The position numbers and the translations under genes are program-made. A stretch of 64,000 bases of DNA, taken from the IMG/VR virus record IMGVR_UViG_3300032245_001860, positions 1-64,000 of that record. The stretch is one strand, 5' to 3'. The number at the start of each line of letters is the position of its first letter. Positions within the stretch are counted from its first letter, which is position 1. The notes beneath the pieces are model-generated. The model saw nothing but the letters and a program-made list of their open reading frames with translations, was not told the DNA's origin and ran no database searches. Shown piece after piece: positions 2 to 47,680 of the stretch.

Positions 2-1045
2 GTCAAGCCAGAATCTGATGTACGCCTTCAGGACGCTTCGACCCTGACCAATGGCATGACCCTTACAAAGTCTGGTCTCAATTCGCTTCGGTCATTCACT
101 GACATTCCATCGTCCATGGTTTCGTTCTTGGAAGAGCGTGGGTTTGAAGAAGACTTGACCCGTTTTGTCAATTCCGAATTGAACCGCCGGGAACAAGACT
201 GGTCAAACGATGGCAAGGAATCAAGAGAATTCCGTGTCCGTGTCCGCCAAGATGAGAATGGCAACGATGCTGTACGGGCTGTTGTATCTGGTCGATATGG
301 TGTGATTGATAACCATGAGGCTATGGAAATGATTGCAAATTCTTTGCCTTCATTGTCTGATGCGCTTGCATCCCACATATCCAATGATGGAGATGATATC
401 TTTGGTAACGTGCTTTTACCAGACTACATGAAGAGTGAACCAGACTCTGATTATGGGGTAGGCATTGCATTCCGCAACAGCGAGATTAAGAATTCTACCT
501 TCAACATCTCACCGTTCCTGTTCCGTGCCATCTGCCTTAACGGTATGATTTGGGGTCGGCAGGATTCCAGTATCCAAATTAACCAAAAGCATCTTGGCAA
601 CATTGACCGTGCGGAATTGCAACATAAGGTTAACCATGCCGTCAAGGTTGCATTGACACAAGGCAATGACCTTTTGACTTTGCTTGGACATTCCAAGAAA
701 GTTAAGGTTGACAACCCATTGCAGGTGATTGCACAACTCTCCCGTGATAATGGTATGACCATTGAACAAGGACGTGCATGGCACAAGGGATACTTGGAAT
801 CCCTTGGTGAGGCTAACGGTCAACTACATGACCGTTCTGCATTCGGTATTGTCAACGGTTTGACCCGTTCTGCCCAACTTTACAAGGGTTCTACCCGTGA
901 AAGCATGGAAACAACCGCTTCTTTGATACTTTCACCTGCTATTGATGCAGATTTGCAGGCAATAAGCAAAAGATGGGGCAGAATTGCCGATAATGCATCA
1001 CAATTGAAGGAAAAAGTGGTGCAACAGTACGCTTATATAGGCTAA
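2..1045 (+). CDS. DUF932-family phage protein (5' end outside window)
   Basis: Frame is open from position 2; NSEI..STFNISPFLFRAICLNGMI motif and C-terminal F.IVNGLT resemble DUF932. Confidence 0.65.
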   Translation, partial: VKPESDVRLQDASTLTNGMTLTKSGLNSLRSFTDIPSSMVSFLEERGFEEDLTRFVNSELNRREQDWSNDGKESREFRVRVRQDENGNDAVRAVVSGRYGVIDNHEAMEMIANSLPSLSDALASHISNDGDDIFGNVLLPDYMKSEPDSDYGVGIAFRNSEIKNSTFNISPFLFRAICLNGMIWGRQDSSIQINQKHLGNIDRAELQHKVNHAVKVALTQGNDLLTLLGHSKKVKVDNPLQVIAQLSRDNGMTIEQGRAWHKGYLESLGEANGQLHDRSAFGIVNGLTRSAQLYKGSTRESMETTASLILSPAIDADLQAISKRWGRIADNASQLKEKVVQQYAYIG

Positions 1046-4613: not shown

Positions 4614-4772
4614 GAATTGTGATTTGTCAAGAGTATCCCCGGAGAAATCTGGGGATATTTTTTTATTTGAAGCTTTACCCTTGGGGTGATAATATTATCA
4701 CCCCAAATCTTTCATTAAATAACAAAAATAAATGTTTCAAACTGGCTTATTTTAGATATAATATGATAGAGT

Positions 4773-5423: not shown

Positions 5424-5485
5424 TGTATATGTTGCTGGTAATCACAAACTTGCCAGCAACATATTTTGATGGTATAATAGATTAT

Positions 5486-5566
5486 CCTCCGGTGGTGGAA
5501 CGGTATACACGACGGACTTAAAATCCGTTGGCGCAAGCCTTACGAGTTCGAATCTCGTCTGGAGGA
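5486..5566 (+). tRNA. tRNA-Leu(TAA)
   Basis: Acceptor CCTCCGG/CTGGAGG, anticodon arm ACGGA-CTTAAAA-TCCGT, long variable arm, TTCGAAT T-loop. Confidence 0.93.
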
Positions 5567-5642: not shown

Positions 5643-5803
5643 TTTCACTTGGATTGTTTCATGCCTTTCTTACCAAGTGAAAACCAATCCCCCTCTTTCA
5701 GGCAGAGGGGGATTTCCTTATTTATGGGGTTATAATATTATAACCCCAAGATCTTGTTCTAAATAAAATTTGCACAGATTTAATTTATGTGATATAAAAG
5801 GAT

Positions 5804-6656: not shown

Positions 6657-6860
6657 ATGCCCCAAGATACATTAAATTATTTATCTGAAAAAACCGAGCA
6701 TGATTTGTTAGTCATACTTGAAGGATTTCGAATGCTTTTGGCTGATGCTGAATTGTTTGATATGTTAGCTGAAAAGTTAGATTACAATGATGATTGTCTA
6801 ATGGAATTGAGAGATGATGTTCAAAATTATCTTGAAGATGTTCTTGTAGATGTGGTATAA
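6657..6860 (+). CDS. Small acidic hypothetical protein
   Basis: ORF in operon with upstream genes, D/E-rich. Confidence 0.6.
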   Translation: MPQDTLNYLSEKTEHDLLVILEGFRMLLADAELFDMLAEKLDYNDDCLMELRDDVQNYLEDVLVDVV

Positions 6861-6870
6861 TTAGTTTGTT

Positions 6871-6955
6871 GGAGAGGTGGCTGAGTGGTCGATAGCGACT
6901 GTCTTGAAAACAGTTAACGTGAAAGCGTTCGCAGGTTCGAATCCTGTCCTCTCCT
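6871..6955 (+). tRNA. tRNA-Ser(TGA)
   Basis: Acceptor GGAGAGG/CCTCTCC, anticodon arm ACTGT-CTTGAAA-ACAGT, long variable arm AACG-TGAAAG-CGTT, TTCGAAT T-loop. Confidence 0.94.
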
Positions 6956-7274: not shown

Positions 7275-7438
7275 GAGTCAATATTGAAACAGAATGAGAG
7301 CTATCCCCCAGTTTAGTAGTGTTTTCTGGGGGATTTTTTATGCATGGGGTTATAATATTATAACCCCAATTCTCTTACTCAAAATAAAATTTGCATTTCA
7401 AGATATTGTGATATAATGAGCCATCAGAGGTAAATACA

Positions 7439-7945: not shown

Positions 7946-8176
7946 ATGAAATATGTGCTTTATGAAGTGACAGAAAATTATGATGTAGTAATCAAATTAT
8001 CTTTTGAGAATCACACATATTTAAATGCTTTTATTGAACAGCATACAACAGAAAAATCATATGAGCCAAAATTTCTTGTATTAGAATTTGATTCAAATGA
8101 TGATATTGAATATCTTTCTGAATATCAAGGAACTGAACAAAAAAGTCGAAAATATGTGGCGAAGATTATAGATTAA
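7946..8176 (+). CDS. Hypothetical protein
   Basis: 76-aa ORF in cassette. Confidence 0.55.
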   Translation: MKYVLYEVTENYDVVIKLSFENHTYLNAFIEQHTTEKSYEPKFLVLEFDSNDDIEYLSEYQGTEQKSRKYVAKIID

Positions 8177-8191
8177 AGGTATTATTAGTTT

Positions 8192-8312
8192 GTTCAAGAT
8201 GTCTTCAGCATCAAGAACAAAATCCAGAAGGTGGTGCTTCTGGAAAACCATGAGAAGGATGTATCTAAACCTCCTTTGCCAGTTCGTATCTCCTTGGTAC
8301 ATTCTTCTCATG
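8192..8312 (+). ncRNA. Putative structured small RNA with CU-rich anti-SD loop
   Basis: Hairpin TCCAGAAG/CTTCTGGA at 8223-8244; 15-bp stem 8249-8312 enclosing CCTCCTT and TCTCCTT. Confidence 0.5.
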
Positions 8313-8315
8313 ATT

Positions 8316-8383
8316 TGGTGGATAGCTTAAGTAGAGCAGAGGAACATAAGCCTTTGATATGGGTGCAAATCCCATTCCACCTT
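8316..8383 (+). tRNA. Degenerate tRNA-like element, CAT anticodon
   Basis: GGTGGA/TCCACC acceptor, ATGGG-TGCAAAT-CCCAT T arm, irregular anticodon arm. Confidence 0.5.
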
Positions 8384-8385
8384 TT

Positions 8386-8458
8386 GGGCGATTAGCTTAA
8401 TGGTTAAAGCAGGGGACTCATAATCCCTTGAGTGGGGGTTCGAGTCCCTCATCGCCCA
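8386..8458 (+). tRNA. tRNA with CAT anticodon (Ile2 likely, or Met)
   Basis: Acceptor GGGCGAT/ATCGCCC, anticodon arm GGGGA-CTCATAA-TCCCT, TTCGAGT T-loop. Confidence 0.92.
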
Positions 8459-8711
8459 TTGTTTCTGGTTGGTTGGTGTTTTGCATGTCCTATCTCTTCC
8501 CTCCATTAAAATTTCCAGAGAGAAATTATGGAGGGATTTTTTTATTTGAAAATCGAGCTTGGGGTGATTGAATAATCACCCCAATATTTCGAGATAAAAC
8601 ATACCACAATTGCCAGTTAAAGAATAAATTAGTTGATATAAATACACGCATTAGGTATACTATATTACGTGATGAAAATCACACAATGACAAAAGAAAGT
8701 CCTACAATAAA

Positions 8712-9071: not shown

Positions 9072-9230
9072 TTCTAAAGGGGAGAGTAAAATCTCCCCTT
9101 TTTTATTTGTCATGGCAAGCTGGGGTGATAATATTATCACCCCAAAAGAGAACAAATAATTTTAATTTTTTGTACCTAATTCTTTTACCAATCTCTTGCA
9201 AGTTATACTACATTATGTTATTATTAGTCA

Positions 9231-34140: not shown

Positions 34141-37134
34141 ATGAAAAAATTAAGTTATAGAATTGTAATATCTGGTATCAAAGAAGATATTGAAGCGCTT
34201 TGCAAACATATTGGCTTTACTGATCCTGAATATATAAAAGTTGTTAGGCAAAAAGTTGATGACTACAAAGGTTATCAAGTTTTTGCTGCTTGGTTATATA
34301 TTAGGGATGTTGAACCTGAATCATATGTTGTTGCATTGAATAAATATGTTAAAGCCAGACAATTAGATCCTTCAAAAATAAAAGTCACTAAAGATGCTGT
34401 TTCTATTAATGACAATGTTTTTAAGGATAAAATTGAGCTTACTGAATATATCCATTCTACATTCCCCATTATGCAAGTTGAGCAAAAAAAAGATAATGAG
34501 GAAGTAAAAAGCGAAGATCCAGTAATTGTCAACAAAGATAATTCTATAAAAATATATGAAGTTAATAGTGCAGATGATGGTAGAAGATTAGTTGGTGATG
34601 ACACTTCTTGGTGTATTGGGTACAAAGGCCCAAGTAATATGTGGCAGGGTTATAGAGACACCAAAGAATCTTCATTTTTTATTGTTTTTGATAATAATCC
34701 TCCTACTCCTGATCAAAGAAAAGTTGCGATTGATTTTACTTTTAGAGGTGTAGAACTTACTGATATACCTAATCGCACAGGTACACAATTGACTAATGGT
34801 ATGGATTGGGATGCTTATTCTAATTATCTTAAAAGTAGAGGGATTAATTTAGAAGCAAAAAGAGTTAATCCTAATACTGGTCAAGAAGAAAAGATACTTC
34901 AAAATAAACCTGTATCTCCTGAAGAAAAAATTCAAAAAGCAACATTTTCTACTGTAAATATGACTTCTGCCAGAATATTAGAAAAAAATACTGTTATGTT
35001 ATGGCAGTCTGGTAAATGCGAAATATATACGGGTACTCTTAACAGAAATTTTTTAGTTGAGCACGTTTTTCCTAAAGACCCAAAACAAACTTATCTTCAA
35101 TATCCTGATGACCGCACTGATTTTTTGATTACTATTGACAATCCAGATGCTATTTATTACACAGCAAGATGGATGTCTCAAGGAAAACCATTTACAGATG
35201 AAATATTAACATTTCTTATGAAATCTGTTGGTGGTGAAGATGTTTTATCAAAATTCTTAAACTCTGGCGCTGAAGTTCAAGACTCTCAATACAAAATTAT
35301 AAGAGAAAATAAAAGCTTATGGAAAACATACATAAGAACACAAATAATTAAGGCTGAGCAAACTGGGTACTATACACTTCCTTTTGAATATTTCAAAGAC
35401 TTAATGAATTCTGGCAACGATAAACTGATTACATATTATTTATCACTTGGCCTTAATGCAAGCCGAGAATTTGATGTCAAATTATTAAGAGATGAATTTC
35501 CAAATTACCTAAAATTATTATTGATGAGTTCGATGGGAGAAAATAAATCAAATCAATTTGCTCCATCAGTGCAACAAATAATAGTTGATACAAAAGATAA
35601 AGAAATTATTCAAAAATTTGTTCAAGTAGCAACAAATGTAACACCAGATATTGCCTCACAAATACAATCTGATCCAGAATTGTTTTTATTTTATAGTAAA
35701 GCTAATTTGGCGAAACCAGGCAGGAATGCATTTTTTGGTGAATTGGGCAATAAAATGGTTGATGCTGTTTTGAGATCTGGTGATAGAGAAGCAGTAAAAA
35801 AGGCAGCTCTTGGTAGGGGCTTTGAATATCGTGATTTTGCCCTGGCTAAAGAAATGGGTGTTTATGATGAAGCAAAGTTATCCATTTTAAATCCTAATAC
35901 TGTTGATCCAGATATATATCAATTATATGATCCTTCCAATCCTTATGATGTGTCATTAGTAGAGCAAATTCAAGATGTAAATGTTTTATCTTATTTGCAT
36001 CCTGAGTGGAGATCAAATTCAAAAGTTTCGATGGCTAATGCAATAATTAATTTTGAAAATAGACCTCATTCTCAAGAAAAACCAATACCTGATTCTGTTT
36101 ATGAACTAATGTTATATTTGATCAATGACAGTGATTATATGGCTTTTATAAGTCAATATGAATTAAGCGAAAGTGAACAAAATAAACTCAAATCTCTTTA
36201 TTCAGAATTGCAAAATTCATTAAAAAATCCAGAATTTGTAAAAACCTTTTTTACCAATTTCCAATTGATTAAGGGCAATACTCCTGGAATCAGTAGAATG
36301 TTTTCAATGATATATAATAATGTATCCGATGTTTTAAATATTCTACCGAGTGAAGCTTTATCAATTCCAGAAGTAAAAGAATATATTGAAGAGTATATAG
36401 AAGATATTAAATTTGAAAGTCTTTTAAAACATATTGATGTACCTTGGTTGTATGAAGAATTTGTGGAAAGTTGCGCTAAAGACCAAGACTTCTTAAGGCA
36501 AAAATTTAATGATTTTTACAATAAAGACAAAGAATTTGCTTTCCATTTTTTAGGTGATTGTTTTGAAAAACAAAAACCAGATTTAGGTTATTTTATTGCT
36601 ATTCCAGTGAACGTAAAAATTAAGGTAGCTTCTATTTATTTTGAAATTTATCCTGACGAAAAAGAAAGTGAAGAGACCTTAAAAAATAATTTTTTTGATT
36701 CTTTACTGATGAATAAAGGAAATAGAAGTTCTATCACTGAACAGCTTTACATATTAAGAAATTTTCCTAAATTATTCTATTATAAAATAGTACATGGTCT
36801 TCTTATGTTAAGATACATTTATCCAGAAATAAGATCTGCATTAAGACAAATGTATCCTAATATAGCCAATTTAATTCTTCAATATGAAACTGAAACAAAA
36901 TATGGAAGTGATTATTTTGATGAAAATACTGAAGAAGTAATGAGAGGGAAAAGACCAGATGAAGTTGAACCAGAACAACAAGATACATTCTATGATGGTC
37001 CCTCTGAAGAAGATTGGCCAAAGCAAGCTTCAATAAAACTTATGGTAAAAGTTGCCCAAAAACTTGATTTAAAAAAGAAATATAAGTTAGCAGATAAGTT
37101 TACAAATATATTGAGAAAATACAATGTTCAATAA
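34141..37134 (+). CDS. Large paralogous protein 1 (TxWCI domain, C-terminal tag)
   Basis: GDDTSWCIGYKGPSNMW..Y; C-terminal MVKVAQKLDLKKKYKLADKFT. Confidence 0.8.
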   Translation: MKKLSYRIVISGIKEDIEALCKHIGFTDPEYIKVVRQKVDDYKGYQVFAAWLYIRDVEPESYVVALNKYVKARQLDPSKIKVTKDAVSINDNVFKDKIELTEYIHSTFPIMQVEQKKDNEEVKSEDPVIVNKDNSIKIYEVNSADDGRRLVGDDTSWCIGYKGPSNMWQGYRDTKESSFFIVFDNNPPTPDQRKVAIDFTFRGVELTDIPNRTGTQLTNGMDWDAYSNYLKSRGINLEAKRVNPNTGQEEKILQNKPVSPEEKIQKATFSTVNMTSARILEKNTVMLWQSGKCEIYTGTLNRNFLVEHVFPKDPKQTYLQYPDDRTDFLITIDNPDAIYYTARWMSQGKPFTDEILTFLMKSVGGEDVLSKFLNSGAEVQDSQYKIIRENKSLWKTYIRTQIIKAEQTGYYTLPFEYFKDLMNSGNDKLITYYLSLGLNASREFDVKLLRDEFPNYLKLLLMSSMGENKSNQFAPSVQQIIVDTKDKEIIQKFVQVATNVTPDIASQIQSDPELFLFYSKANLAKPGRNAFFGELGNKMVDAVLRSGDREAVKKAALGRGFEYRDFALAKEMGVYDEAKLSILNPNTVDPDIYQLYDPSNPYDVSLVEQIQDVNVLSYLHPEWRSNSKVSMANAIINFENRPHSQEKPIPDSVYELMLYLINDSDYMAFISQYELSESEQNKLKSLYSELQNSLKNPEFVKTFFTNFQLIKGNTPGISRMFSMIYNNVSDVLNILPSEALSIPEVKEYIEEYIEDIKFESLLKHIDVPWLYEEFVESCAKDQDFLRQKFNDFYNKDKEFAFHFLGDCFEKQKPDLGYFIAIPVNVKIKVASIYFEIYPDEKESEETLKNNFFDSLLMNKGNRSSITEQLYILRNFPKLFYYKIVHGLLMLRYIYPEIRSALRQMYPNIANLILQYETETKYGSDYFDENTEEVMRGKRPDEVEPEQQDTFYDGPSEEDWPKQASIKLMVKVAQKLDLKKKYKLADKFTNILRKYNVQ

Positions 37135-39853
37135 TCGTATAGTAGTTGCGCAAGCTGAATTATTAAGACAAATCTTTCTTGCCAAAGAAAAAGATTATAG
37201 TGAGTTTAGAGATTTAGTTCAATCATATCAAGGCCCATATAAACTTTTGTCTGCTTGGTTATTTGCAAGAGATTTTCAAAAACCTCAAGTGGATGATATT
37301 GTTAGACATTTAGATCCATATATCAGAAAAGGTCATTTGAAGCCTGGTGAAATAAATGTTTCACCTAATGCAGTAAAAATCAGAGACAGTCAAGCTTTTG
37401 AGGAAATAGTTCCTTTCACAGATTATATTCATGCGCAATTTCCAGTAGCAACAAAAGAATCTAAAGAACCTGTAAAACAACAAGTTGAAGATATTCCTGT
37501 AGCCACCGGAGATGGAATAAAAATATATCAAATCAATAGTGCAGATGATGGAAGAAGATTAGTTGGCGGCGATACAAAATGGTGTATTGGTTATCCTGGT
37601 CCTAATAATATGTGGCCTCATTATAGACAAAATCAAGCTTCCACATTTTTTGTTGTATATGATGAAAATCCTCCAACTTCTGATCAAAGAAAAGTAGCTA
37701 TTGATTTTACTAAAAATGATATTCTATTAACAGATATACCTAACACAACTGGACATCAATTGTCTAATGGTATGGACTGGGAAGATTATTCTAAATATCT
37801 TATGAAAAAGGGCGTAAATTTAGATGCTACAAGAATAAACCCTGAAACCAATGAAGAAGAAAAGATTTTTCAAAATAAACCAGTTACACCACAAGAAAAA
37901 TTAGTAACTACTTTATTTAATTTGACAAGAAATCAAAGTAAATATCAACCCAATTTAGGTCTTACTCCAGAAGATATAAAAATGTGGTCTACTGGTAAGT
38001 TTCAAATAAGATCTGATATGGAAAACCAAACTGTCATTCAAGCAGATGATAATGATCCAAATTATTTTTATTTTAGAAAAAATTCCAGATCAACTCCAAT
38101 AAATCTTCCAACAGAAGAAGAAATTCCTGGCATAAGCATTTCAAAAGAGCCTATGGATAATCCTTCAGGTGATGGAAGAACCCTATATAGTTCTATCACC
38201 ATAAATACAGATGAAACAAAAACATTTCTATCAAAATTTATTGGTATGGGATGGATTTTACCAGATCCAATATTTGATTATGTTATTGATTTACCTGATG
38301 GCAAAGATATCATAATTCAATATATAGACACAGGATTAAAACTTCCAAAACAGCAACTGGACAAAATAAAAAATGTACCAAGTTTCATAAAAAGCTATGT
38401 TCGTAAACAACTTCAAGCTGTAGAAAGAGCTGGTTCTACAGATTTAGAATTTTTAGAATTTGCAGATCCAAATGACCTAAAAATCAGAAATCAAGTTTTA
38501 GACGCACTTTATTCAAGATATGAAAATCAATCATATGACGATATGAATATTTTCTTTGAAAATACTCCATTAGAATGGTACAAAATACCTCAAATAGGTT
38601 TATTCTTAACAGATAAAACTGATTATATTGATTTCAATGATGAGTTAGCTATAAAAGTTGCCCTTGCTAAAGGTATGTGGTTTTATCTTAATGAAAATCC
38701 AACACTTGAAAATGCTCTAATATATTTGCATGATTTAAATGCTATAAATTCATTTAAAGACAAAGCAATAGCAGAAAAATATCATCCAACATTTTTTGAA
38801 GCTCCTTATTTTTTAGGAGTATGGAAAAAATTGTGGGATAAAGTTCCTGATTCTTTAAAAAAACTTCCTGAACTAAATCAATATAAAGCAGTGGGTGAAT
38901 TTGAACCATATGGTGGTTTACATCTTGAGCAACCATATCCCGGCGATGACATTGAATTATTATATGAAACAGCTGCAATTAATATTTTGGCTGGTAATGC
39001 ACAAAGAACTTATTTATATAAAAATAAACCTGAATTTTGGATGTATTTAATAAAGAATTTTAACAAATTGATGGAAGGTGTTTTCAGGAATATTAATTAT
39101 ATAACTCTTGAATCTGAAACTGATGAAGATGGCAATGATACTGAAACTAAAACTTATAGTAGACATGATCAAAGAGAAAAATTTTTAAAGTATTTTTCTT
39201 ATGCTTTGTCAACTAATATTTTAAGTAATCCTGAAATCATATCAGCTATAAAAGACAATTTTAAGGAAAATGAAACAGATTATATATTATCTGGTTTTAT
39301 GAATGTTCCACAAGTATTAGATTATTTCGTTGAAAAAATAAATACTTTTTCAGATGCATATCAAATAGCTGATTTTAGGTTTTCAAATTTATTTATGAAA
39401 GAAAACCCTATTTTAAGAAAAATTACACAAAATGGTTTTGATGTTGATAATTTCTTAAATGTTACATTTCAGCCTTTGCATCTTATTTATAATGCATACA
39501 AATGGTATCCAGAAATAATTGATAAGATTAGCGATGAAGGTTTCCTTAAAATTTTAAAATCTCCAAGAGACAGTACTATTGCAAGAGAATATTTCAGTTT
39601 CTTGCTTGAAAAAAGACCTAATGTTATATGGACTTTATTTGAAGAAGGTTCAAGAATATTTACCTACGAGCAAAGAGTTTTCCTGACACAAAAGAAAAAA
39701 GAAATGTCTCAACAACCACAAGAACCAATTGAAGAAGAACCTACTACAGCTTTTGTAAAATCAATAGTGAAGGTGGCTAATAAACTTGACAGCAAAAATA
39801 AATACAAGTTAGCGGACAAGTTTACAAATATCTTGAGAAAATACAATGTTTAA
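37124..39853 (+). CDS. Large paralogous protein 2
   Basis: GGDTKWCIGYPGPNNMW..Y; C-terminal IVKVANKLDSKNKYKLADKFT. Confidence 0.8.
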   Translation: MFNNRIVVAQAELLRQIFLAKEKDYSEFRDLVQSYQGPYKLLSAWLFARDFQKPQVDDIVRHLDPYIRKGHLKPGEINVSPNAVKIRDSQAFEEIVPFTDYIHAQFPVATKESKEPVKQQVEDIPVATGDGIKIYQINSADDGRRLVGGDTKWCIGYPGPNNMWPHYRQNQASTFFVVYDENPPTSDQRKVAIDFTKNDILLTDIPNTTGHQLSNGMDWEDYSKYLMKKGVNLDATRINPETNEEEKIFQNKPVTPQEKLVTTLFNLTRNQSKYQPNLGLTPEDIKMWSTGKFQIRSDMENQTVIQADDNDPNYFYFRKNSRSTPINLPTEEEIPGISISKEPMDNPSGDGRTLYSSITINTDETKTFLSKFIGMGWILPDPIFDYVIDLPDGKDIIIQYIDTGLKLPKQQLDKIKNVPSFIKSYVRKQLQAVERAGSTDLEFLEFADPNDLKIRNQVLDALYSRYENQSYDDMNIFFENTPLEWYKIPQIGLFLTDKTDYIDFNDELAIKVALAKGMWFYLNENPTLENALIYLHDLNAINSFKDKAIAEKYHPTFFEAPYFLGVWKKLWDKVPDSLKKLPELNQYKAVGEFEPYGGLHLEQPYPGDDIELLYETAAINILAGNAQRTYLYKNKPEFWMYLIKNFNKLMEGVFRNINYITLESETDEDGNDTETKTYSRHDQREKFLKYFSYALSTNILSNPEIISAIKDNFKENETDYILSGFMNVPQVLDYFVEKINTFSDAYQIADFRFSNLFMKENPILRKITQNGFDVDNFLNVTFQPLHLIYNAYKWYPEIIDKISDEGFLKILKSPRDSTIAREYFSFLLEKRPNVIWTLFEEGSRIFTYEQRVFLTQKKKEMSQQPQEPIEEEPTTAFVKSIVKVANKLDSKNKYKLADKFTNILRKYNV

Positions 39854-42563
39854 TTATCGCATAGTAGTAGCAAATAAAGATTTATTCATTTCAATCTTTA
39901 GATCTGTTGGTAAAGATTACAACAACTATAAAGAAACAATTAATAACTATAATTCTGTTTTCAAATCTATTGCTGCTTGGATGCTTGCAAGAGACTCCAA
40001 TGAATTTGCAATTAACGATATAGTTAGCCATCTTACCGAATATATAAATCGTAAAAAATTAAACCCTGCTAATATCAAAGTATCTATAGCTAATATTGTA
40101 ATTAATGACAAATCTATTCCTGATTTAGAAGAATTATTCAACTATGTCCATGCCACCTTTCCAATAGTAAAGAAACAAGAAGAACAACCAGCTGAAGAAA
40201 TAATAGAACGTACTCCTATTCTCACTGGCGATGGAATACAGATATTCAAAGTAGATAGGGCTCAAGATAGTAAAGAACTTGCAGCTGATACTTCTTGGTG
40301 CATAGCTTATAAAGGCCCAAATAATATGTGGCAAAGCTATAGGAGTAACCAAGCTGCTACTTTCTTCATTGTATGGGATGAAAATCCACCAACACCTAAT
40401 CAAAGAAAAGTGGCTTTGCAATATAATAAAAATAATGTCCAAATCACTGATATTGTAAACAGAACAGGTTTTAATTTAACTAACGACATTACTTTTGAAT
40501 ATCAAGGACAAACTATTACAGGCAGAGATATACCTACTTATCTTACATATTTGAAAAGTAAGGGAGTGGATATTGATGCCACAACTATTAACCCTGAAAC
40601 TGGCCAAGAAGAAAAAATACTTAAAAACAAACCTATCACTCCTGAAGAAGCAATGGAGACAGAGATTGGCGCATATGTAAGATATAATTCTTCAGATATT
40701 AGTGTTGATAATATTAAAAGTTGGGCTACAGGAGAGTTTACTCTTACCATTCCTCAAGGTTTCATCAACAAAGTCCGTGATGGAGAATATCAAGTTTTTA
40801 CTAAAGATAATTACTCTGGAAGAAGTTTTAAAGTTCCTTATGATTTTGTAACTGAAGAAATACCATTTGATGATCACCCCCGGAACGCTTTACCTTTGCC
40901 ATTAAAATCCGTCACTTTTGAATCAGAAAATATAAAAACATACCTTGCCAAATTCATCGGAATGGGATGGATTATGTCTGATGAAATTGTAGATTATTTG
41001 ATGGAAGTTCCTGGTGGTAAAGATTACTTAATTCAATATGTAAATACTGGCTTACAATTACCTAAAAGTCAAGTTGATAAATTAAGCACTAATAAACAAC
41101 TTTTTAATTCCTATTTGAAACAACAACTGACAGCATTCGAATTAGGGCACAACAATGGAGAGTTTTTACAATATATTGATACTGATAATGAAGAAGTAAA
41201 AAATAAAATTCTTGAAAGATATAAGAAAAATTCATTTATCAATATTCCCTTAAAATGGCTTAAAGTATTACCACAAATAGGTGTTTTTAAGTTTACAGGT
41301 CCTAACTTTGATTTTGGAGATGAATTTATAAATCAATTGGCTATTTCTCATGGTAATACTGACATTTATGAACAATTTCCAACTCTTGAAAATACAAAAA
41401 TTTTACTTCAATTTCCTGAAGCAATTGATAAACTAAAACCAAGAGCTGAAGCAGAAGGATATTCTTCAAATGTATTTAGTGAGATTGATCAATTAAGTGA
41501 TTGGACTGTTAGATGGAAATCCGTGCCAGAAATATTTCACGACAATCCTGAATTTCAAATATATAAATCCGCTGCTTTAGCTGGTCAAAATTCATATGAC
41601 AGAATGGATCTCAAGAAACACGAAGGTAATAATCCAGATGATTTCTTATATTACACAATTCTTTTGATGAATGATGAAATACAACATGAAGAAAAAAATT
41701 CTCCGATAATCAAAAACCCTGAATTTTGGAAATTTGCAATTAATAACTTTGATCATTTGATAGATACAGTATTTAAAAAAATCAAAATATGGCATAGAGA
41801 TTTACCTGATAATTTTGATGAAGATAATGATGACGAAGAAAATTTTGATGAAATAGAAGACAAAGATAAACAAAGGGTAGAACTTGCTGGTTTCTTAAAA
41901 AATATGCCACCTGAAATATTCTTCTCCCCTGAAATGGTTGAATTGATCAAGAGCAAGTTTGACCTTGAAATAATAAACAATGCATTAGTAAACTATTTGC
42001 AAAAAGGTTGGAATCTTGACGCATTTTCAGCATACATAAAAGATTTTGCTGATTTAGCTCAGTTTTCTAATTATGGATTTATATTTTTTACTCATCCAAA
42101 TAATTTAATTAAAACATTAGTGAGAGATCATTACGATGAACAAAAATTCTTATATGCTTTGAGTAATTTAGCTGGCTTTAAATCAAGTGTTTTTGTAGAA
42201 CTTACTAAATGGCTTCCAGAATTATTTCTAAAAGTATCTGATGAAGCAATATTGAAAATGCTTACCAATATTCGTGGCACAATACCAAGAGAATTTTTAG
42301 ATCATATCTTAGAATATAAACCAGATTTCATAAAAAAATATTCTGATCGATTAATACCTAAAATGCATTCACAAGATGTATGGTATTATCTTACTGAAGA
42401 ATTGAGAAAACAACAAGAAGAAGCAGATAAAACAATTGAAGAAGAAGATAAGTTTGCTTCTGTAAAAATTATGGTGAAAGTGGCACAAAAGCTTGATATT
42501 AAAAAGAAATATGAGTTAGCAGATAAACTAACTCATATTCTAAAGGTAAAAACCTCTCAATAG
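39846..42563 (+). CDS. Large paralogous protein 3
   Basis: ADTSWCIAYKGPNNMW..Y; C-terminal MVKVAQKLDIKKKYELADKLT. Confidence 0.8.
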   Translation: MFNYRIVVANKDLFISIFRSVGKDYNNYKETINNYNSVFKSIAAWMLARDSNEFAINDIVSHLTEYINRKKLNPANIKVSIANIVINDKSIPDLEELFNYVHATFPIVKKQEEQPAEEIIERTPILTGDGIQIFKVDRAQDSKELAADTSWCIAYKGPNNMWQSYRSNQAATFFIVWDENPPTPNQRKVALQYNKNNVQITDIVNRTGFNLTNDITFEYQGQTITGRDIPTYLTYLKSKGVDIDATTINPETGQEEKILKNKPITPEEAMETEIGAYVRYNSSDISVDNIKSWATGEFTLTIPQGFINKVRDGEYQVFTKDNYSGRSFKVPYDFVTEEIPFDDHPRNALPLPLKSVTFESENIKTYLAKFIGMGWIMSDEIVDYLMEVPGGKDYLIQYVNTGLQLPKSQVDKLSTNKQLFNSYLKQQLTAFELGHNNGEFLQYIDTDNEEVKNKILERYKKNSFINIPLKWLKVLPQIGVFKFTGPNFDFGDEFINQLAISHGNTDIYEQFPTLENTKILLQFPEAIDKLKPRAEAEGYSSNVFSEIDQLSDWTVRWKSVPEIFHDNPEFQIYKSAALAGQNSYDRMDLKKHEGNNPDDFLYYTILLMNDEIQHEEKNSPIIKNPEFWKFAINNFDHLIDTVFKKIKIWHRDLPDNFDEDNDDEENFDEIEDKDKQRVELAGFLKNMPPEIFFSPEMVELIKSKFDLEIINNALVNYLQKGWNLDAFSAYIKDFADLAQFSNYGFIFFTHPNNLIKTLVRDHYDEQKFLYALSNLAGFKSSVFVELTKWLPELFLKVSDEAILKMLTNIRGTIPREFLDHILEYKPDFIKKYSDRLIPKMHSQDVWYYLTEELRKQQEEADKTIEEEDKFASVKIMVKVAQKLDIKKKYELADKLTHILKVKTSQ

Positions 42564-44134: not shown

Positions 44135-45868
44135 TTAGTTTCCTTTTTTATAGTTTTTATTATTATACACACCTGCATAGGCCCAATTTTCATCTTTATC
44201 AGTCATTGGCCTTTCAGTGAGCTTGTCTATTGTTTGATTGTTATTTTCTTCTATTTCGTGTTTAGGAGCAAATAATCTTAATTGTGATCTGTTATTTTCT
44301 ATTTGTTTTTCATGAAGATCAAGAAGTGGTTGTGTTTTTAAGAACGGGATTATTTCATCATCACTGTAGAAATTTTTTCTATATCCACTTGGTATTCTAA
44401 AATCATTGCCTGTCTTTTCTTTATATTGAAATGCAAATTTACTTTTCTCAAAGAAATTTTCTATTTTATTTGCCACTAAAAAATAAAGATATTCAGGTTG
44501 TTTTTGATACCAAGACATGAATGGTTCTTTTGATTCTGAATCTTTATATTTTTCTTTTGCTTCTTCAAACTTTTTTGTAGCTGTTTCAAGTACACCATTG
44601 ACATCTAAATATCTTTCAAAATTGTGTGTAGTAAATGATTTTTTTAATGCTAATTCTGCTTTGTGTTCTAATGCAGTGTAGAAAGTGTTAGCGTAATCAT
44701 CAAGAGGATAATCTTCTATTGTATATGCTTCATTATCCCAATTAAATGCACTACCTGATCTTTGTAATCCATCATGCATTTCACTAATTGCAGCATCTAT
44801 AATATCTGGAATATGTGAGCCATAAAGATTTGATTCAGCGAATTGTTCATGATTCCAAACAGGAGATATAATTCCAAATCTGTTAAAATCTTCTGTTACA
44901 TCATCATCAATAGCATCATATTCTGATTCATCTGGGCCATAAATAGATTCTGTTATAGCGTATCCAATTTGATCAGGTTCATATGTCCAATAAATTCTTT
45001 CTTGCCAATCTTCAAAATGATCAGCTACAGGATTTATATTAGATTGTTTTTTGATATCTTCTCTGTCGTCAAAAAATTCTCTAATTTTTTCCACTAAATC
45101 ATCATCTTCAACTTTAGCATTATTTGGGCCCTTGATTTGAATTACTTTATCACCTTGTATTTCAATTGTTGCTTTAGGTTGATTTTGTGGATCTCTTAAG
45201 GAATAGATTCTTGAATGTCCTCTTCTCACTGCATCCCAATATCCAGCAACACAGTGATGCATTTTTGCACCTTCAACATCAAGATCATTTTCTGATTTGA
45301 CATTTACCATATTCCAACCATCAGGATATGCCATTACTACTTCTCGGTCAGCTGGATTGTAAAATTTACCTCCACCTTTACCTATAAGTATTTGCTCCCA
45401 TTCATCTGTGTCTTCAACCACTTGTTCCCAGGACTTCAATCCAAGATTATAATCAGGGTCATTTGTTTCAATATTGTTGACAAAATCTTGCATATGGAGA
45501 GCTTGTTCTAAAAAATTAGCATGCTCACCATTCATACCACCTGAAGGAATATTATGATCATATTCACCATTAGGTTTTTGAGGTTGTATTCTCCAGCCTT
45601 TTAATTTATGAAATAACCAGTTTTTAAATCTTTCATTTGTGAAGTTGTCTAATATGAATTTTTCTTCTCTTGTTGGTCTATTTTGACTTGAAAGATTTTC
45701 TAATTCTTGCAATGTGATATTTGGATTTTGTTTGATTGCGCCTAACATTTTACCTTTGGCAGCATTATCAAATTTGGGGTCAGAAAAAACAGCTAAAATA
45801 GATTCATTTATGCCTTGAGTTCTAAGCTTTTCTACTTCATCTTGTAAACTTGCAAATCTGTACCACAT
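44135..45868 (-). CDS. PcfJ-like domain protein with MWYR N-terminus
   Basis: LDVEGAKMHHCVAGY...IYSLRD..QPKATIEI...QIKGPNN. Confidence 0.78.
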   Translation of the reverse strand: MWYRFASLQDEVEKLRTQGINESILAVFSDPKFDNAAKGKMLGAIKQNPNITLQELENLSSQNRPTREEKFILDNFTNERFKNWLFHKLKGWRIQPQKPNGEYDHNIPSGGMNGEHANFLEQALHMQDFVNNIETNDPDYNLGLKSWEQVVEDTDEWEQILIGKGGGKFYNPADREVVMAYPDGWNMVNVKSENDLDVEGAKMHHCVAGYWDAVRRGHSRIYSLRDPQNQPKATIEIQGDKVIQIKGPNNAKVEDDDLVEKIREFFDDREDIKKQSNINPVADHFEDWQERIYWTYEPDQIGYAITESIYGPDESEYDAIDDDVTEDFNRFGIISPVWNHEQFAESNLYGSHIPDIIDAAISEMHDGLQRSGSAFNWDNEAYTIEDYPLDDYANTFYTALEHKAELALKKSFTTHNFERYLDVNGVLETATKKFEEAKEKYKDSESKEPFMSWYQKQPEYLYFLVANKIENFFEKSKFAFQYKEKTGNDFRIPSGYRKNFYSDDEIIPFLKTQPLLDLHEKQIENNRSQLRLFAPKHEIEENNNQTIDKLTERPMTDKDENWAYAGVYNNKNYKKGN

Positions 45869-45871
45869 AGT

Positions 45872-47680
45872 TTAAGCCTTGTTCGCCAATCTAAATCTTT
45901 TATTATTGAATGAATATCTCCACTCATTCACGCCTTCAGTAAATAATTTTTGCTGTTGTCTTCTACTTAAGAAATCTTGGTAATAATCTTCTGTTCCTCT
46001 ATACAATGCTTCACTTGGAGTAACTGGTGAAACATCTAAATTAATAGATAGTTTATTTGCAATATCATAAAACTCTTTTGGCATATTGTTTCTTATATAG
46101 GTATACAAAGCTCTATAAAAATAAACAGGATAAACATCATAAATATTTTCATATTCTTTGAGTTGATGATAACCTCTTGAATCTGGCCTCTCATATGGTT
46201 GATTTGCTAATTCATTTATTTCATCATCACTCATATTTTCAAGATTTAATTTGACAGGTTTGTTTCCAGGATTAAATTCTTCACTTACTGCTGCTTCTTT
46301 ATAATCTCTAATTTTTTCTAATTCTTCTGAGAGAGCTTCTTTGTATTTATGTCTTATATCATCTATATTAAGACCGCTTATTATAATTTCTCTGTTTGTT
46401 CCTAAAGTACCAACTTGAGATGCATAGTCCTTAATTTTTTCTAAATCTTTACGAATATACATATCGCCAAGTAAAGAAATTAATTCATCAAATCTATCAT
46501 CATCAGGTATTTCTTGATAAGTTTTATAATAACCAGCATTATCTACCCCGACTTGACTGATTAAATATTCAACTGGCAAGTCTCTGTAAAGGTCATCATA
46601 ATCTCTTTCAATTGGCCTGTAACGAACACCCAATTCGTCAGTCATTGTTTCATCATTTTCAGGATTTAAATAATCTGCAATTGCATACAAAGCATCTTGT
46701 TCAGACATATTCTGATTCAGGTTCAGGTCTTCATTGAGATCATGTTTAGAATAAAAATTATTTTGTTCAATCCAGTAAAGAGCTAATTTTTTATACTCTG
46801 GTTTGGGTGGTTTATTGCCTTTGCCTTGAATTTGCTTTACTTTGTCAGGCAATCCTATTTCTATAGTAACATGTGGTTTGTTTGATTCATCTCTTAAAGA
46901 ATAAGTGTCGCTAATGCCTTGTTCATATAAGCCATGGTAATTATTTGTGCCTGTACAGTGACCCATATTTTGACCTTCAGCATCAAAATCTCTTTCTTGG
47001 GTAAGTTTGACCATCATCCAATCATTGTATTCTTCAGGTAATCCTAAAGATTTAACTGTCTGTGCATCAAAAATCATTACTACATTTGGGTCAACTATTT
47101 TGCCATTTTCTTTCTTGATTTTAGAATATGTTGCACCTGGTTCTTGATTACTTAATTCTTCATGCCATATTTCACTGGCTCTACTTGCTTGATCTAAATT
47201 CATAGAAAAAATATTGAATCTTGGGTTTTCACTTACATATTCAACATACCAATCTAAAATATGATAAAGCTCATTTGTAACACCGATAATTGGTCCTATA
47301 GCAATATGTGAAAATTTAGGATAACTGAATTTTTCTGGGTCATGTTGATTTGGTCTGTAAGAAGGTAAAGCTACTCTTTCAACCCATTTATAAAAATTAG
47401 CTTTTTGTTCTTCGGAAATATTCATTCCTGATAATCTTGTGTCTAAATCTGCTAATAATCTTAATTCGTCATTAGATACTTTTTGTAATTGATTAGTTTG
47501 GAATTTGCCTTGTAATTCATCCCAAGGCATAAGAGGATTTTGCATCAAGGCTCCAATATATTTACCTCTTAATGGTATATCGGTCATTGCTTGTAGGTTA
47601 TCAATTGTGTCATCGCTTACACCTTTAGATTTAAGTGTTTCAAAAGCTCGTTCTACGTTTTGTGCAAGTCTATACCACAT
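45872..47680 (-). CDS. PcfJ-like domain protein (paralogue) with MWYR N-terminus
   Basis: EGQNMGHCTG...YSLRDESNKPHVTIEI...QIQGKGN. Confidence 0.78.
   Translation of the reverse strand: MWYRLAQNVERAFETLKSKGVSDDTIDNLQAMTDIPLRGKYIGALMQNPLMPWDELQGKFQTNQLQKVSNDELRLLADLDTRLSGMNISEEQKANFYKWVERVALPSYRPNQHDPEKFSYPKFSHIAIGPIIGVTNELYHILDWYVEYVSENPRFNIFSMNLDQASRASEIWHEELSNQEPGATYSKIKKENGKIVDPNVVMIFDAQTVKSLGLPEEYNDWMMVKLTQERDFDAEGQNMGHCTGTNNYHGLYEQGISDTYSLRDESNKPHVTIEIGLPDKVKQIQGKGNKPPKPEYKKLALYWIEQNNFYSKHDLNEDLNLNQNMSEQDALYAIADYLNPENDETMTDELGVRYRPIERDYDDLYRDLPVEYLISQVGVDNAGYYKTYQEIPDDDRFDELISLLGDMYIRKDLEKIKDYASQVGTLGTNREIIISGLNIDDIRHKYKEALSEELEKIRDYKEAAVSEEFNPGNKPVKLNLENMSDDEINELANQPYERPDSRGYHQLKEYENIYDVYPVYFYRALYTYIRNNMPKEFYDIANKLSINLDVSPVTPSEALYRGTEDYYQDFLSRRQQQKLFTEGVNEWRYSFNNKRFRLANKA

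What the first reader, a model, noticed from the sequence alone, without database searches (positions are those of the whole stretch)
8192..8312. Structured RNA upstream of tRNAs with double anti-SD loop
Seen: after a TATTAT -10 box come an 8-bp hairpin and a 15-bp stem (CATGAGAAGGATGTA/TACATTCTTCTCATG) enclosing AACCTCCTTTGCC and ATCTCCTTGG, both complementary to AAGGAG(G). There is no plausible sense ORF. This is reminiscent of CU-loop cuckoo-type RNAs.
Basis: partly seen in the sequence, partly recalled or inferred. Interest (0 to 1): 0.6.

Follow-up and report, generated by a model that had tools for sequence, protein, structure and literature searches.

The report
Structured leader RNA of phage tRNA unit
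The flagged stretch is a real, evolutionarily conserved three-hairpin RNA at the very start of a small jumbo-phage transcript that also carries a degenerate tRNA copy and a tRNA-Met; it belongs to a so far undescribed RNA family, but its "anti-Shine-Dalgarno" loop is a feature of one subclass only and it is not a cuckoo-type RNA.

Summary
Observation confirmed and extended. Window 8192-8312 folds into three hairpins (hp1 8192-8218, hp2 8223-8244, hp3 8249-8312; z = -6.1). They begin 6 nt after a -10 box (TATTAT 8180-8185). A tRNA-like element (8316-8383), tRNA-Met(CAU), a GU-rich trailer and an intrinsic terminator follow.

The genome is an uncultured 316-kb jumbo phage. I found 91 homologous copies (76 distinct) in viral and metagenome contigs and none in 185,579 prokaryote genomes. 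Covariation supports all three helices (97.5% of cells paired; 17 of 28 pairs with double changes; 0 of 500 shuffles reach this). No Rfam family matches.

hp1 and hp2 are the constant core. They always sit at +1 of a sigma70-type, mostly extended -10, promoter. hp3 is modular: absent or short in about a quarter of variants, with three loop classes. The window's class A loop (CUCCUUUGCCnGUUCGUAUCUCC) is nearly invariant in 20 variants and predicted unpaired. Other classes carry one CUCC or none.

It fails the cuckoo definition and is not homologous to T4 RNAC/RNAD or the HK022 put region. Expression could not be tested. Best reading: a new phage leader RNA family, probably released by RNase P. 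Anti-SD action remains an untested, class-specific possibility.

The parts
8157..8162 (+). -35-like hexamer TGGCGA, 17 nt before the -10 box. It is weak here (3 of 6 matches to TTGACA). Relatives carry TTGACA, TTGCAT, TTGCAG or TTTACT at the same distance.
   Evidence: Sequence; upstream regions of 76 variants.
8180..8185 (+). -10 box TATTAT. In most relatives it is an extended -10 (TGnTATACT, TGnTAATAT or TGnTATTAT), always 5-6 nt before the G of GUUCAAG.
   Evidence: The same -10 plus TAGTTTGTT arrangement precedes tRNA-Ser at 6856-6870.
8192..8218 (+). hp1: a 5'-terminal hairpin (4 bp, a 2x2 AA/AA internal loop, 4 bp, 7-nt loop UCUUCAG). The inferred transcription start is G8192.
   Evidence: Pair 9-19 occurs as GC:27, UA:23, CG:12, AU:11. 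G.U pairs are frequent on the + strand.
8223..8244 (+). hp2: an 8-bp hairpin with loop GUGGUG (8231-8236).
   Evidence: 100% of cells paired; two pairs with compensatory changes. The loop is invariant, but it was fixed in two of my search patterns.
8249..8312 (+). hp3: a 17-bp stem (8249-8265 with 8296-8312) closing a 30-nt loop (8266-8295). This is the 'class A' loop, with CUCCU at 8271-8275 and 8290-8294 and GUUCGUAU at 8282-8289.
   Evidence: All 13 modelled stem pairs show compensatory changes. The loop core is nearly invariant in 20 class A variants. hp3 is absent or different in other variants.
8316..8383 (+). tRNA-like element: a degenerate copy of the neighbouring tRNA-Met. The cloverleaf is kept. 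The anticodon loop has 8 nt here and 6-8 nt in relatives, without U33. The T-loop is UGCAAAU and the D-loop has no GG.
   Evidence: Rfam tRNA 39.4 bits; ARAGORN does not call it; 37 distinct relatives, with covarying acceptor pair 7-66 and T-stem.
8385..8459 (+). tRNA-Met (anticodon CAU; G1-C72, so not initiator-like). No CCA is encoded.
8460..8497 (+). Conserved GU-rich 3' trailer (UUGUUUCUGGUUGGUUGGUGUUUUGCAUGUCC).
   Evidence: Alignment A1.
8498..8543 (+). Intrinsic terminator: stem UCCCUCCAU / AUGGAGGGA (8498-8506 with 8528-8536), then seven U (8537-8543). It ends the unit of about 352 nt.
   Evidence: The simple scan misses it because its loop is longer than 8 nt.

Best explanation
Window 8192-8312 is the 5' leader of a self-contained phage transcription unit of about 350 nt. 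The order is sigma70-type promoter, three-hairpin leader, degenerate tRNA-Met copy (tRNA-like), tRNA-Met(CAU), GU-rich trailer, intrinsic terminator. The leader is a member of an undescribed structured-RNA family confined, as far as I could see, to one clade of uncultured jumbo phages.

Shown:
- The three helices are real and kept by compensatory mutation on the + strand.
- hp1 + hp2 form the constant core.
- The core always starts 5-6 nt after a -10 box, in at least eight different upstream contexts.
- hp3 is an exchangeable module with three loop classes, or it is absent.
- The leader is always linked to the tRNA-like element and/or tRNA-Met. In many relatives an 85-aa ORF lies in between; this phage has lost it.

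Inferred:
- Transcription starts at G8192, so hp1 is a 5'-terminal hairpin.
- RNase P cuts at the 5' end of the tRNA-like element (8316/8317) and frees an RNA of about 124 nt with hairpins at both ends, which should be nuclease-resistant.
- The constant core acts as a stabiliser and/or protein handle.
- The hp3 loop is a sequence-specific contact surface. In class A, the window's class, it is a constrained CU-rich 23-mer whose partner (RNA or protein) is unknown.
For: - Structure: z = -6.1. RNAalifold on 11 sequences gives 11 of 28 pairs with compensatory changes.
- On 76 distinct sequences, 97.5% of cells are paired and 17 of 28 pairs show double changes. The covariation score is 0.337 against 0.135 +/- 0.006, and 0 of 500 shuffles reach it. 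Slid controls give at most 0.12.
- Many G.U pairs and few A.C pairs indicate RNA on the + strand.
- Promoter: -35, 17 nt, then TGnTAnnnT lies directly upstream in all variants despite unrelated spacers and contexts.
- Downstream parts: tRNA-like element and tRNA-Met; terminator.
- Distribution: single copy in the phage; 0 hits in 185,579 prokaryote genomes; no Rfam match for the window or relatives.
- The class A loop is nearly invariant while its stem varies.
- The leader is kept with or without the ORF, and with or without hp3.
Against: - The TSS, RNase P cleavage and accumulation of a 124-nt species are therefore inferences.
- The window's own promoter is weaker than its relatives' (-35 TGGCGA, no TG extension), so read-through from upstream genes may contribute.
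- A pure stabiliser role would not explain conserved loop sequences.
- The invariance of the hp2 loop is partly an ascertainment effect, because GTGGTG was part of my search patterns.
- Alignment A3 was fitted to the model, and in hp3-less variants the tRNA-like acceptor stem is forced into the hp3 columns. That inflates the helix-3 counts somewhat. A2 does not have this problem.
Confidence: 0.55

Rival explanations
1. Trans-acting anti-SD small RNA. The processed leader uses the two exposed CUCC(U) motifs of the hp3 loop to pair with GGAG-type Shine-Dalgarno regions of host or phage mRNAs and block translation. hp1 and hp2 serve as a stability scaffold. The different hp3 loop classes would be different 'seeds'.
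For: - Both motifs are predicted unpaired.
- The 23-nt class A loop core is nearly invariant in 20 variants while the stem covaries.
- A first CUCCUU motif also occurs in class C loops.
- Phage genes use SD-like sequences moderately: G rises to 31% at -10, and AGGA occurs in 20% of upstream windows against 4% background.
- Mean duplex energy of the loop with 340 phage start regions is slightly better than for shuffled loops (-9.55 against -8.80 +/- 0.40).
Against: - Class B loops and the hp3-less variants have no CU motif, so anti-SD pairing cannot be the family's function.
- The best phage targets are not better than with shuffled loops (minimum -23.1 against -21.6 +/- 2.5).
- The one 13-nt perfect complement (genome 106040-106052) lies in the conserved coding end of a dUTPase-like gene and is expected about 0.2 times per genome by chance.
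- The host is unknown, so host targets could not be examined.
- There is no expression evidence.
Confidence: 0.2
2. Promoter-proximal protein- or RNA-polymerase-binding element (nut- or put-like). hp1 and hp2 on the nascent RNA recruit a factor, or bind RNA polymerase, to modify elongation or termination through the untranslated tRNA unit.
For: - The core is two adjacent hairpins starting at +1 of the transcript in every variant.
- The loop sequences nCUnCAG and GUGGUG are conserved while the stems covary.
- The transcript is largely untranslated, a situation in which antitermination is used elsewhere (rRNA operons and HK022 put; my own knowledge).
Against: - The other tRNA units of the same phage (promoters at 5450 and 6832) have no such leader.
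- A strong conserved intrinsic terminator closes the unit only about 350 nt downstream, which argues against programmed read-through.
- Model R1 gives no significant hit in the HK022 immunity region (best 6.2 bits, E = 0.45).
- No boxA-like sequence is present.
Confidence: 0.1
3. Vestigial 5' UTR. The leader evolved as the translational control region of the 85-aa ORF found between hp3 and the tRNA(-like) element in many relatives, and it is a functionless remnant in this phage, which has lost the ORF.
For: - About half of the variants carry the conserved ORF 5-15 nt after hp3, without an SD.
- The conserved loop motif GUUCGUA is complementary to the ORF's start region UAUGAAC over 7 bp (read from the sequences).
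- The ORF is absent from this genome.
Against: - The leader is kept intact, with compensatory changes, in many independent ORF-less arrangements, including hp3-less ones directly abutting the tRNA-like element.
- Class A loops are equally conserved with and without the ORF.
- The 7-bp complementarity has roughly a 0.3 chance expectation (my estimate) and does not covary: class C variants with GUUGUGU keep the same AUGAAC start.
Confidence: 0.06
4. A DNA-level or mimicry element: inverted repeats acting as an operator, or hp1 acting as a solitary CRISPR-repeat mimic (an RNA anti-CRISPR).
For: - hp1 is a 27-nt GUUC...GAAC unit at +1 of a promoter. This superficially resembles solitary repeat units (Racr concept; PMC10651486, listed).
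- hp1 overlaps the transcription start, where operators often lie.
Against: - Frequent G.U pairs (for example 38 of 76 at pair 7-21) and stem covariation fit RNA, not a protein-bound DNA palindrome.
- A scan of 185,579 prokaryote genomes with the hp1 consensus gave only 114 scattered single matches, about the number chance predicts, and no arrays.
- No Rfam CRISPR-DR model matched.
Confidence: 0.03

Closest known systems
T4 small stable RNAs RNAC (species 1) and RNAD (species 2)
   Same: Both are phage-encoded, structured RNAs of about 120-140 nt, transcribed from the tRNA gene region next to tRNAs, with unknown function (PMC3014915; PMC9697503; T4 annotation). The likely biogenesis, processing together with tRNA precursors, is the same kind.
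   Different: - In T4 they lie downstream of tRNA-Arg; here the RNA is the 5' leader.
- There is no sequence or structure homology: model R1 finds nothing at rnaC or rnaD.
- T4 rnaC carries a tRNA-type T-arm. Here the tRNA-like part is a separate element.
Cuckoo RNAs (CcsR / RSs0680 / SmelC397 family) of alphaproteobacteria
   Same: Both have tandem hairpins, a CU-rich anti-SD-like sequence exposed in a hairpin loop, and co-transcription with a neighbouring gene.
   Different: - The defining feature, every hairpin loop carrying CCUCCUCCC (PMC4615179), is not met. hp1 and hp2 loops are UCUUCAG and GUGGUG, and hp3 has CCUCCUU and UCUCCUU in one 30-nt loop.
- The context is a phage rather than an alphaproteobacterium.
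- The CU motif is absent in many family members.
C/U-rich-loop base-pairing sRNAs of Firmicutes (RsaE/RoxS, RNAIII type; from my own knowledge)
   Same: An unpaired pyrimidine-rich motif is presented in a hairpin loop and could pair with G-rich SD regions.
   Different: There is no homology, no evidence of targets, and the motif is class-specific within the family.
tRNA-precursor-derived spacer RNAs (e.g. E. coli 3'ETS-leuZ) and tRNA-like 3'-end processing signals (mascRNA type; from my own knowledge)
   Same: A non-tRNA segment of a tRNA precursor would be released by tRNA-processing enzymes. A non-decoding tRNA-like element sits exactly where a cut would define the end of the upstream RNA.
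   Different: Those are cellular. Here the released part is a conserved, highly structured 5' leader. Cleavage has not been shown.
HK022 put / lambda nut nascent-RNA elements
   Same: Two adjacent stem-loops are encoded immediately downstream of a phage promoter.
   Different: - No similarity by covariance model.
- A conserved terminator closes the unit.
- There is no boxA.

Membership tests
Cuckoo RNA family (CcsR/RSs0680) | 2-4 adjacent hairpins, each loop carrying CCUCCUCCC | tested here: not met
   Definition from PMC4615179. The loops here are UCUUCAG, GUGGUG and a 30-nt loop with CCUCCUU and UCUCCUU. CCUCCUCCC does not occur.
Cuckoo RNA family (CcsR/RSs0680) | Alphaproteobacterial host; co-transcription with an upstream small hypothetical (DUF1127-type) gene | tested here: not met
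   The genome is a 316-kb phage record. The upstream 76-aa ORF has no Pfam family. The motif is absent from 185,579 prokaryote genomes.
Any Rfam 15 family | Covariance-model match | tested here: not met
   Nothing overlaps 8187-8315 on the + strand at E up to 10. Relatives L008, L020, L107 and L113 give only tRNA hits.
T4 RNAC/RNAD | Small structured RNA transcribed from a phage tRNA cluster | tested here: inconclusive
   Location and structure fit. Transcription and stability could not be tested.
T4 RNAC/RNAD | Sequence and structure homology to rnaC or rnaD | tested here: not met
   Model R1 with filters off on the T4 tRNA region: best hit 9.3 bits, E = 0.31, and not at rnaC or rnaD.
HK022 put RNA | Homology to putL or putR (two-hairpin RNAP-binding RNA) | tested here: not met
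   Model R1 on HK022 27.6-30.1 kb: best hit 6.2 bits, E = 0.45. The put sites are not annotated in the record; their location there is from my own knowledge.
HK022 put RNA | Suppresses downstream terminators in cis | not testable with these tools
   Needs transcription assays. The conserved terminator 350 nt downstream argues against it.
RNA anti-CRISPR (solitary repeat unit) | Similarity to a CRISPR repeat of a host array | tested here: not met
   The hp1 consensus in genome contigs gave 114 single scattered matches and no arrays. No CRISPR-DR Rfam hit. The exact-pattern test would miss diverged repeats.
Canonical tRNA (for 8316-8383) | 7-nt anticodon loop with U33, T-loop UUCRANY, D-loop GG | tested here: not met
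   The loop is AACAUAAG here and ACAUAAA, AAUAAA or AUAUAAA in relatives. The T-loop is UG[C/U/A]RAnU. The D-loop has no GG. ARAGORN does not call it.
New leader family defined here (model R1) | hp1 (GUUCRAG...GAAC) + hp2 (GUGGUG loop) at +1 of a sigma70-type promoter, followed by a tRNA-like element and/or tRNA-Met | tested here: met
   The window scores 117.6 bits, E = 2e-23. Promoter and downstream elements as.

The most novel reading that the evidence does not exclude
A modular phage riboregulator made from a tRNA precursor. A constant two-hairpin scaffold (hp1 + hp2) carries an exchangeable 'targeting' hairpin (hp3 loop classes A, B, C, or none). RNase P, acting at a non-decoding tRNA-like punctuation element, releases it. 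In class A phages such as this one it acts as an anti-Shine-Dalgarno RNA that shuts down SD-led (host) translation.
Probability: 0.15. Interest if true: 0.75.

Novelty: new variant of a known kind. Interest (0 to 1): 0.5.

Why it matters
Functions of phage-encoded small RNAs are almost unknown. T4's RNAC and RNAD, from the same kind of locus, remain unexplained decades after their discovery.

This element gives a second, well-defined case with unusually good comparative support: 76 variants, covariation in every helix, a defined promoter and a defined downstream processing signal. It also has a natural modular design, with a constant core and a swappable loop, which makes hypotheses testable by simple swaps.

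It also shows a non-decoding tRNA-like element kept next to a real tRNA. In relatives there is a protein-coding gene whose stop codon lies inside a tRNA. Both bear on how phages use the tRNA-processing machinery to punctuate transcripts.

If the CU-rich loop does act on SD sequences, it would be a phage RNA tool for translational takeover.

Tried and rejected
- Rfam: gathering and permissive scans of the window and of four relatives gave no family for the leader.
- Phage GenBank collection, blastn with the region: only the tRNA-Met matched.
- Extra copies in the same genome, by BLAST and by model R1: single copy.
- CRISPR-repeat mimicry of hp1: no arrays in prokaryote genomes. Rejected.
- Leader in cellular genomes: 0 hits.
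- Hypothesis that the CU-rich loop arose only where the ORF was lost: refuted by L107 and about 10 other class A variants that keep the ORF.
- Pairing of the 3' trailer with hp2: no covariation. L004 changes hp2 but not the trailer.
- Tertiary or kissing contacts: a mutual-information scan found only the helix pairs. hp2-loop to hp3-loop (GGUG/YRCC) and hp2-loop to tRNA-like acceptor (GGUGG/CCACC) complementarities are only 4-6 bp and cannot covary, so I make no claim.
- Phage mRNA targets of the hp3 loop: not better than shuffled loops. The 13-nt match at genome position 106040 is judged to be chance.
- The 85-aa ORF of relatives: no Pfam or PHROG family. The AlphaFold model is all-beta with pLDDT 75, and Foldseek against PDB found nothing (best E = 0.25). 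An ORF-anchored search for more distant loci found only known ones.
- Host inference: a 997-aa protein found no match among phage records. The terminase-like protein found only relatives of 26% identity or less. The host stays unknown.
- Small sense peptide from AUG 8259: not conserved in frame.
- hp2 as a minus-strand terminator: there are no leftward genes to terminate and the T-run is short. Rejected.
- Only genetic code 11 was used. The costly protein searches were not needed.

Full report
**1. What is at the coordinates**

The window is the first 64 kb of a 315,852-bp IMG/VR virus record, 88% complete. It is a jumbo phage encoding a Pol III alpha-type polymerase, ribonucleotide reductase, a Mu-type portal, a terminase-like ATPase, UvsW-like helicase and Hsp70. 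Its closest cultured relatives share no more than 26% identity in the terminase-like protein. The host is unknown.

- TATTAT at 8180-8185.
- An 8-bp hairpin at 8223-8244 with loop GUGGUG.
- A long stem at 8249-8312, in fact 17 bp with G.U pairs.
- A 30-nt loop inside that stem, with CUCCU at 8271-8275 and 8290-8294.

A further hairpin, hp1 (8192-8218), was overlooked.

The 129-nt stretch folds at -47 kcal/mol, against -26.4 +/- 3.4 for shuffles (z = -6.1). Both CU motifs are predicted unpaired. Two CTCCT within 25 nt is common in this genome (31 pairs), so the motif pair alone proves nothing.

**2. Surroundings**

- Directly after hp3 comes a tRNA-like element at 8316-8383. Rfam tRNA scores 39 bits and ARAGORN is silent.
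- Next is tRNA-Met(CAU) at 8385-8459.
- A conserved GU-rich trailer follows.
- A terminator hairpin at 8498-8536 with seven U closes the unit.

The phage's other tRNA units (Leu/Lys at 5486, Ser at 6871) have strong TTGnnn-17/18-TGnTATAAT promoters and almost no leader. The stretch from -10 to +1 before tRNA-Ser (GGTATAATTAGTTTGTT) is nearly the same as the one before hp1 (GGTATTATTAGTTTGTT).

**3. Relatives**

Homologues came from three routes:
- A neighbouring 76-aa protein.
- DNA words from hp1 and hp2 in the viral collection.
- One word search of the metagenome collection.

A covariance model (R1) confirmed 91 copies, 76 of them distinct, at E between 1e-10 and 1e-26. The prokaryote genome collection has none, and the phage has one copy.

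In 11 hand-picked sequences, 11 of 28 pairs show compensatory changes. In the 76 distinct sequences:
- 97.5% of cells pair.
- 17 of 28 pairs have double changes.
- The covariation score is 0.337, against 0.135 in shuffles (0 of 500 reach it) and at most 0.12 for slid controls.

G.U pairs are frequent and A.C pairs rare, so the structure is read on the + strand as RNA, not as a DNA palindrome.

Two caveats apply. A3 is fitted to the model, and in hp3-less variants it aligns the tRNA-like acceptor stem as 'hp3'. The hp2 loop GTGGTG was also part of my search words.

**4. Anatomy of the family**

In every variant the G of GUUCRAG lies 5-6 nt after a -10 box. That box is usually TGnTATACT, TGnTAATAT or TGnTATTAT, with a -35 (TTGACA, TTGCAT or TTTACT) 17 nt upstream. 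At least eight unrelated upstream contexts share this arrangement. That makes G8192 the inferred start and hp1 a 5'-terminal hairpin. The window's own promoter is the weakest type (TGGCGA-17-TATTAT, no TG).

hp1 and hp2 are always present. hp3 is modular:

| Class | hp3 loop | CUCC motifs |
|---|---|---|
| A (window) | xCUCCUUUGCCnGUUCGUAUCUCC | two |
| C | CUCCUUACCG... | one |
| B | AACAUGGUUCGUAUGCCCGUUA | none |
| D | short hairpin or no hp3 | none |

Within class A (20 distinct sequences) the 23-nt loop core is almost invariant, while the stem and linkers vary.

Downstream modules also shuffle. An 85-aa ORF (MNDIL...) is present in about half of the variants, with or without the tRNA-like element, and there are other inserts. 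tRNA-Met is found downstream in most contigs that reach far enough.

The ORF is absent from this genome and has no known family or fold. Class A loops occur with and without the ORF, so the CU motifs are not a consequence of ORF loss.

**5. The tRNA-like element**

Thirty-seven distinct copies keep the acceptor, D, anticodon and T stems, with covariation at pair 7-66 and in the T-stem. They depart from canonical tRNA in three ways:
- The anticodon loop varies in length (6-8 nt) and lacks U33.
- The T-loop is UGnRAnU.
- The D-loop lacks GG.

It looks like a degenerate copy of the adjacent tRNA-Met that is kept for its shape. The most economical role is as a processing signal for RNase P or RNase Z. 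This is inference.

**6. Mechanism**

Shown: a conserved three-helix RNA at the start of a small tRNA unit.

Inferred:
- Transcription starts from G8192.
- RNase P cleaves at 8316/8317 and releases an RNA of about 124 nt, with a hairpin at its 5' end and hp3 three nucleotides from its 3' end. This geometry is known to protect bacterial RNAs from 5'-end-dependent RNase E or RppH attack and from 3' exonucleases (my own knowledge).

Loop conservation means that mere stabilisation is not the whole story. Something recognises the loops: nCUnCAG and GUGGUG in the core, and the class-specific hp3 loop.

For the window's class A the obvious candidates are GGAG-type sequences. I tested this as far as possible:
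- Phage genes use SD moderately.
- The loop's duplex energies with 340 phage start regions are only marginally better on average than those of shuffled loops, and not better at the top.
- The single 13-nt perfect complement lies in a dUTPase-like coding end and is within chance.

The anti-SD idea therefore stays possible for class A, but it is unsupported, and it cannot be the family's common function.

**7. Comparison with known systems**

- Cuckoo RNAs require CCUCCUCCC in each of 2-4 hairpin loops (PMC4615179). Not met.
- T4 RNAC and RNAD are the nearest analogue in kind: small structured RNAs from the tRNA region with unknown role (PMC3014915, PMC9697503). They lie downstream of tRNA-Arg and are not homologous.
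- HK022 put-type elements share the position (two hairpins after a promoter) but not the sequence or structure, and the conserved terminator argues against antitermination.
- CRISPR-repeat mimicry was tested and not supported.

**8. Verdict**

It is an undescribed phage RNA family of unknown function, with strong comparative support and a clear set of experiments.

Noticed in passing
window 1132-27199 (26 copies, e.g. 4681-4704, 5725-5748, 7345-7368, 8559-8584, 9121-9143): A perfect 22-24-nt palindrome, (T)TGGGGTG[A/G]TAATATTA[T/C]CACCCCA(A) and close variants, occurs 26 times in the first 27 kb and nowhere else in the 316-kb genome. The copies examined lie in intergenic DNA, four of them about 10-20 nt after an intrinsic terminator. 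It contains an extended -10-like TGnTAATAT on both strands. It may be an operator, a hairpin promoter or a boundary element of the (early?) small-gene region.
   Followed up: partly
window 8316-8383: A non-decoding tRNA-like element that looks like a degenerate copy of the adjacent tRNA-Met. The cloverleaf is kept by covariation in 37 distinct relatives, but the anticodon loop is 6-8 nt without U33 and the T and D loops are non-canonical. ARAGORN misses it; Rfam tRNA scores 39 bits.
   Followed up: yes
relatives, e.g. L004:3126-3383, L008:3370-3627, L107:135-392: A conserved 85-aa ORF lies between hp3 and the tRNA(-like) element. Its last codons are the 5' acceptor strand, and its TAG stop is U8-A9-G10 of the tRNA-like element or of tRNA-Met itself. 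RNase P cleavage would therefore remove the stop codon from the mRNA. The ORF has no SD, no Pfam or PHROG family and no fold match.
   Followed up: partly
genome G000:C1:106040-106052 (outside the window): A 13-nt perfect complement (ACTGGCAAAGGAG) to the hp3 loop lies at the 3' end of a dUTPase-like gene, 12 nt before a 125-aa HAD-like ORF. About 0.2 such matches are expected per genome, so I judge it chance.
   Followed up: partly
window 8460-8497: The GU-rich trailer after tRNA-Met (UUGUUUCUGGUUGGUUGGUGUUUUGCAUGUCC) is conserved among relatives. It shows no covariation with the leader. Its function is unknown.
   Followed up: partly
L113:1100-1160(-), L020, L004:3440-3500: Some relatives carry an extra hairpin of about 60 nt (UUUCCUGAUUGAUGG...CAAUCAGGAA) inserted between the tRNA-like element and tRNA-Met. 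The whole unit is a mosaic of shuffled modules, probably through recombination at the shared TAGCTTAA D-arm sequence.
   Followed up: no
window 5427-5478 and 6832-6870: The other tRNA units have near-consensus extended -10 sigma70 promoters (TTGCCA-17-TGnTATAAT and TTGAAG-18-TGnTATAAT). The stretch from -10 to +1 before tRNA-Ser is almost identical to that before hp1. The phage therefore appears to rely on a host sigma70-type polymerase in this region.
   Followed up: partly
window 56-1045, 44135-45868, 45872-47680; genome 90459-93713 and 210860-212572: The gene content is unusual for a phage: DUF932 and two PcfJ-like proteins in the window, plus a DnaE-type Pol III alpha and an Hsp70/DnaK elsewhere. 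Three consecutive ORFs of 900-1000 aa (34141-42563) have no detectable family.
   Followed up: no
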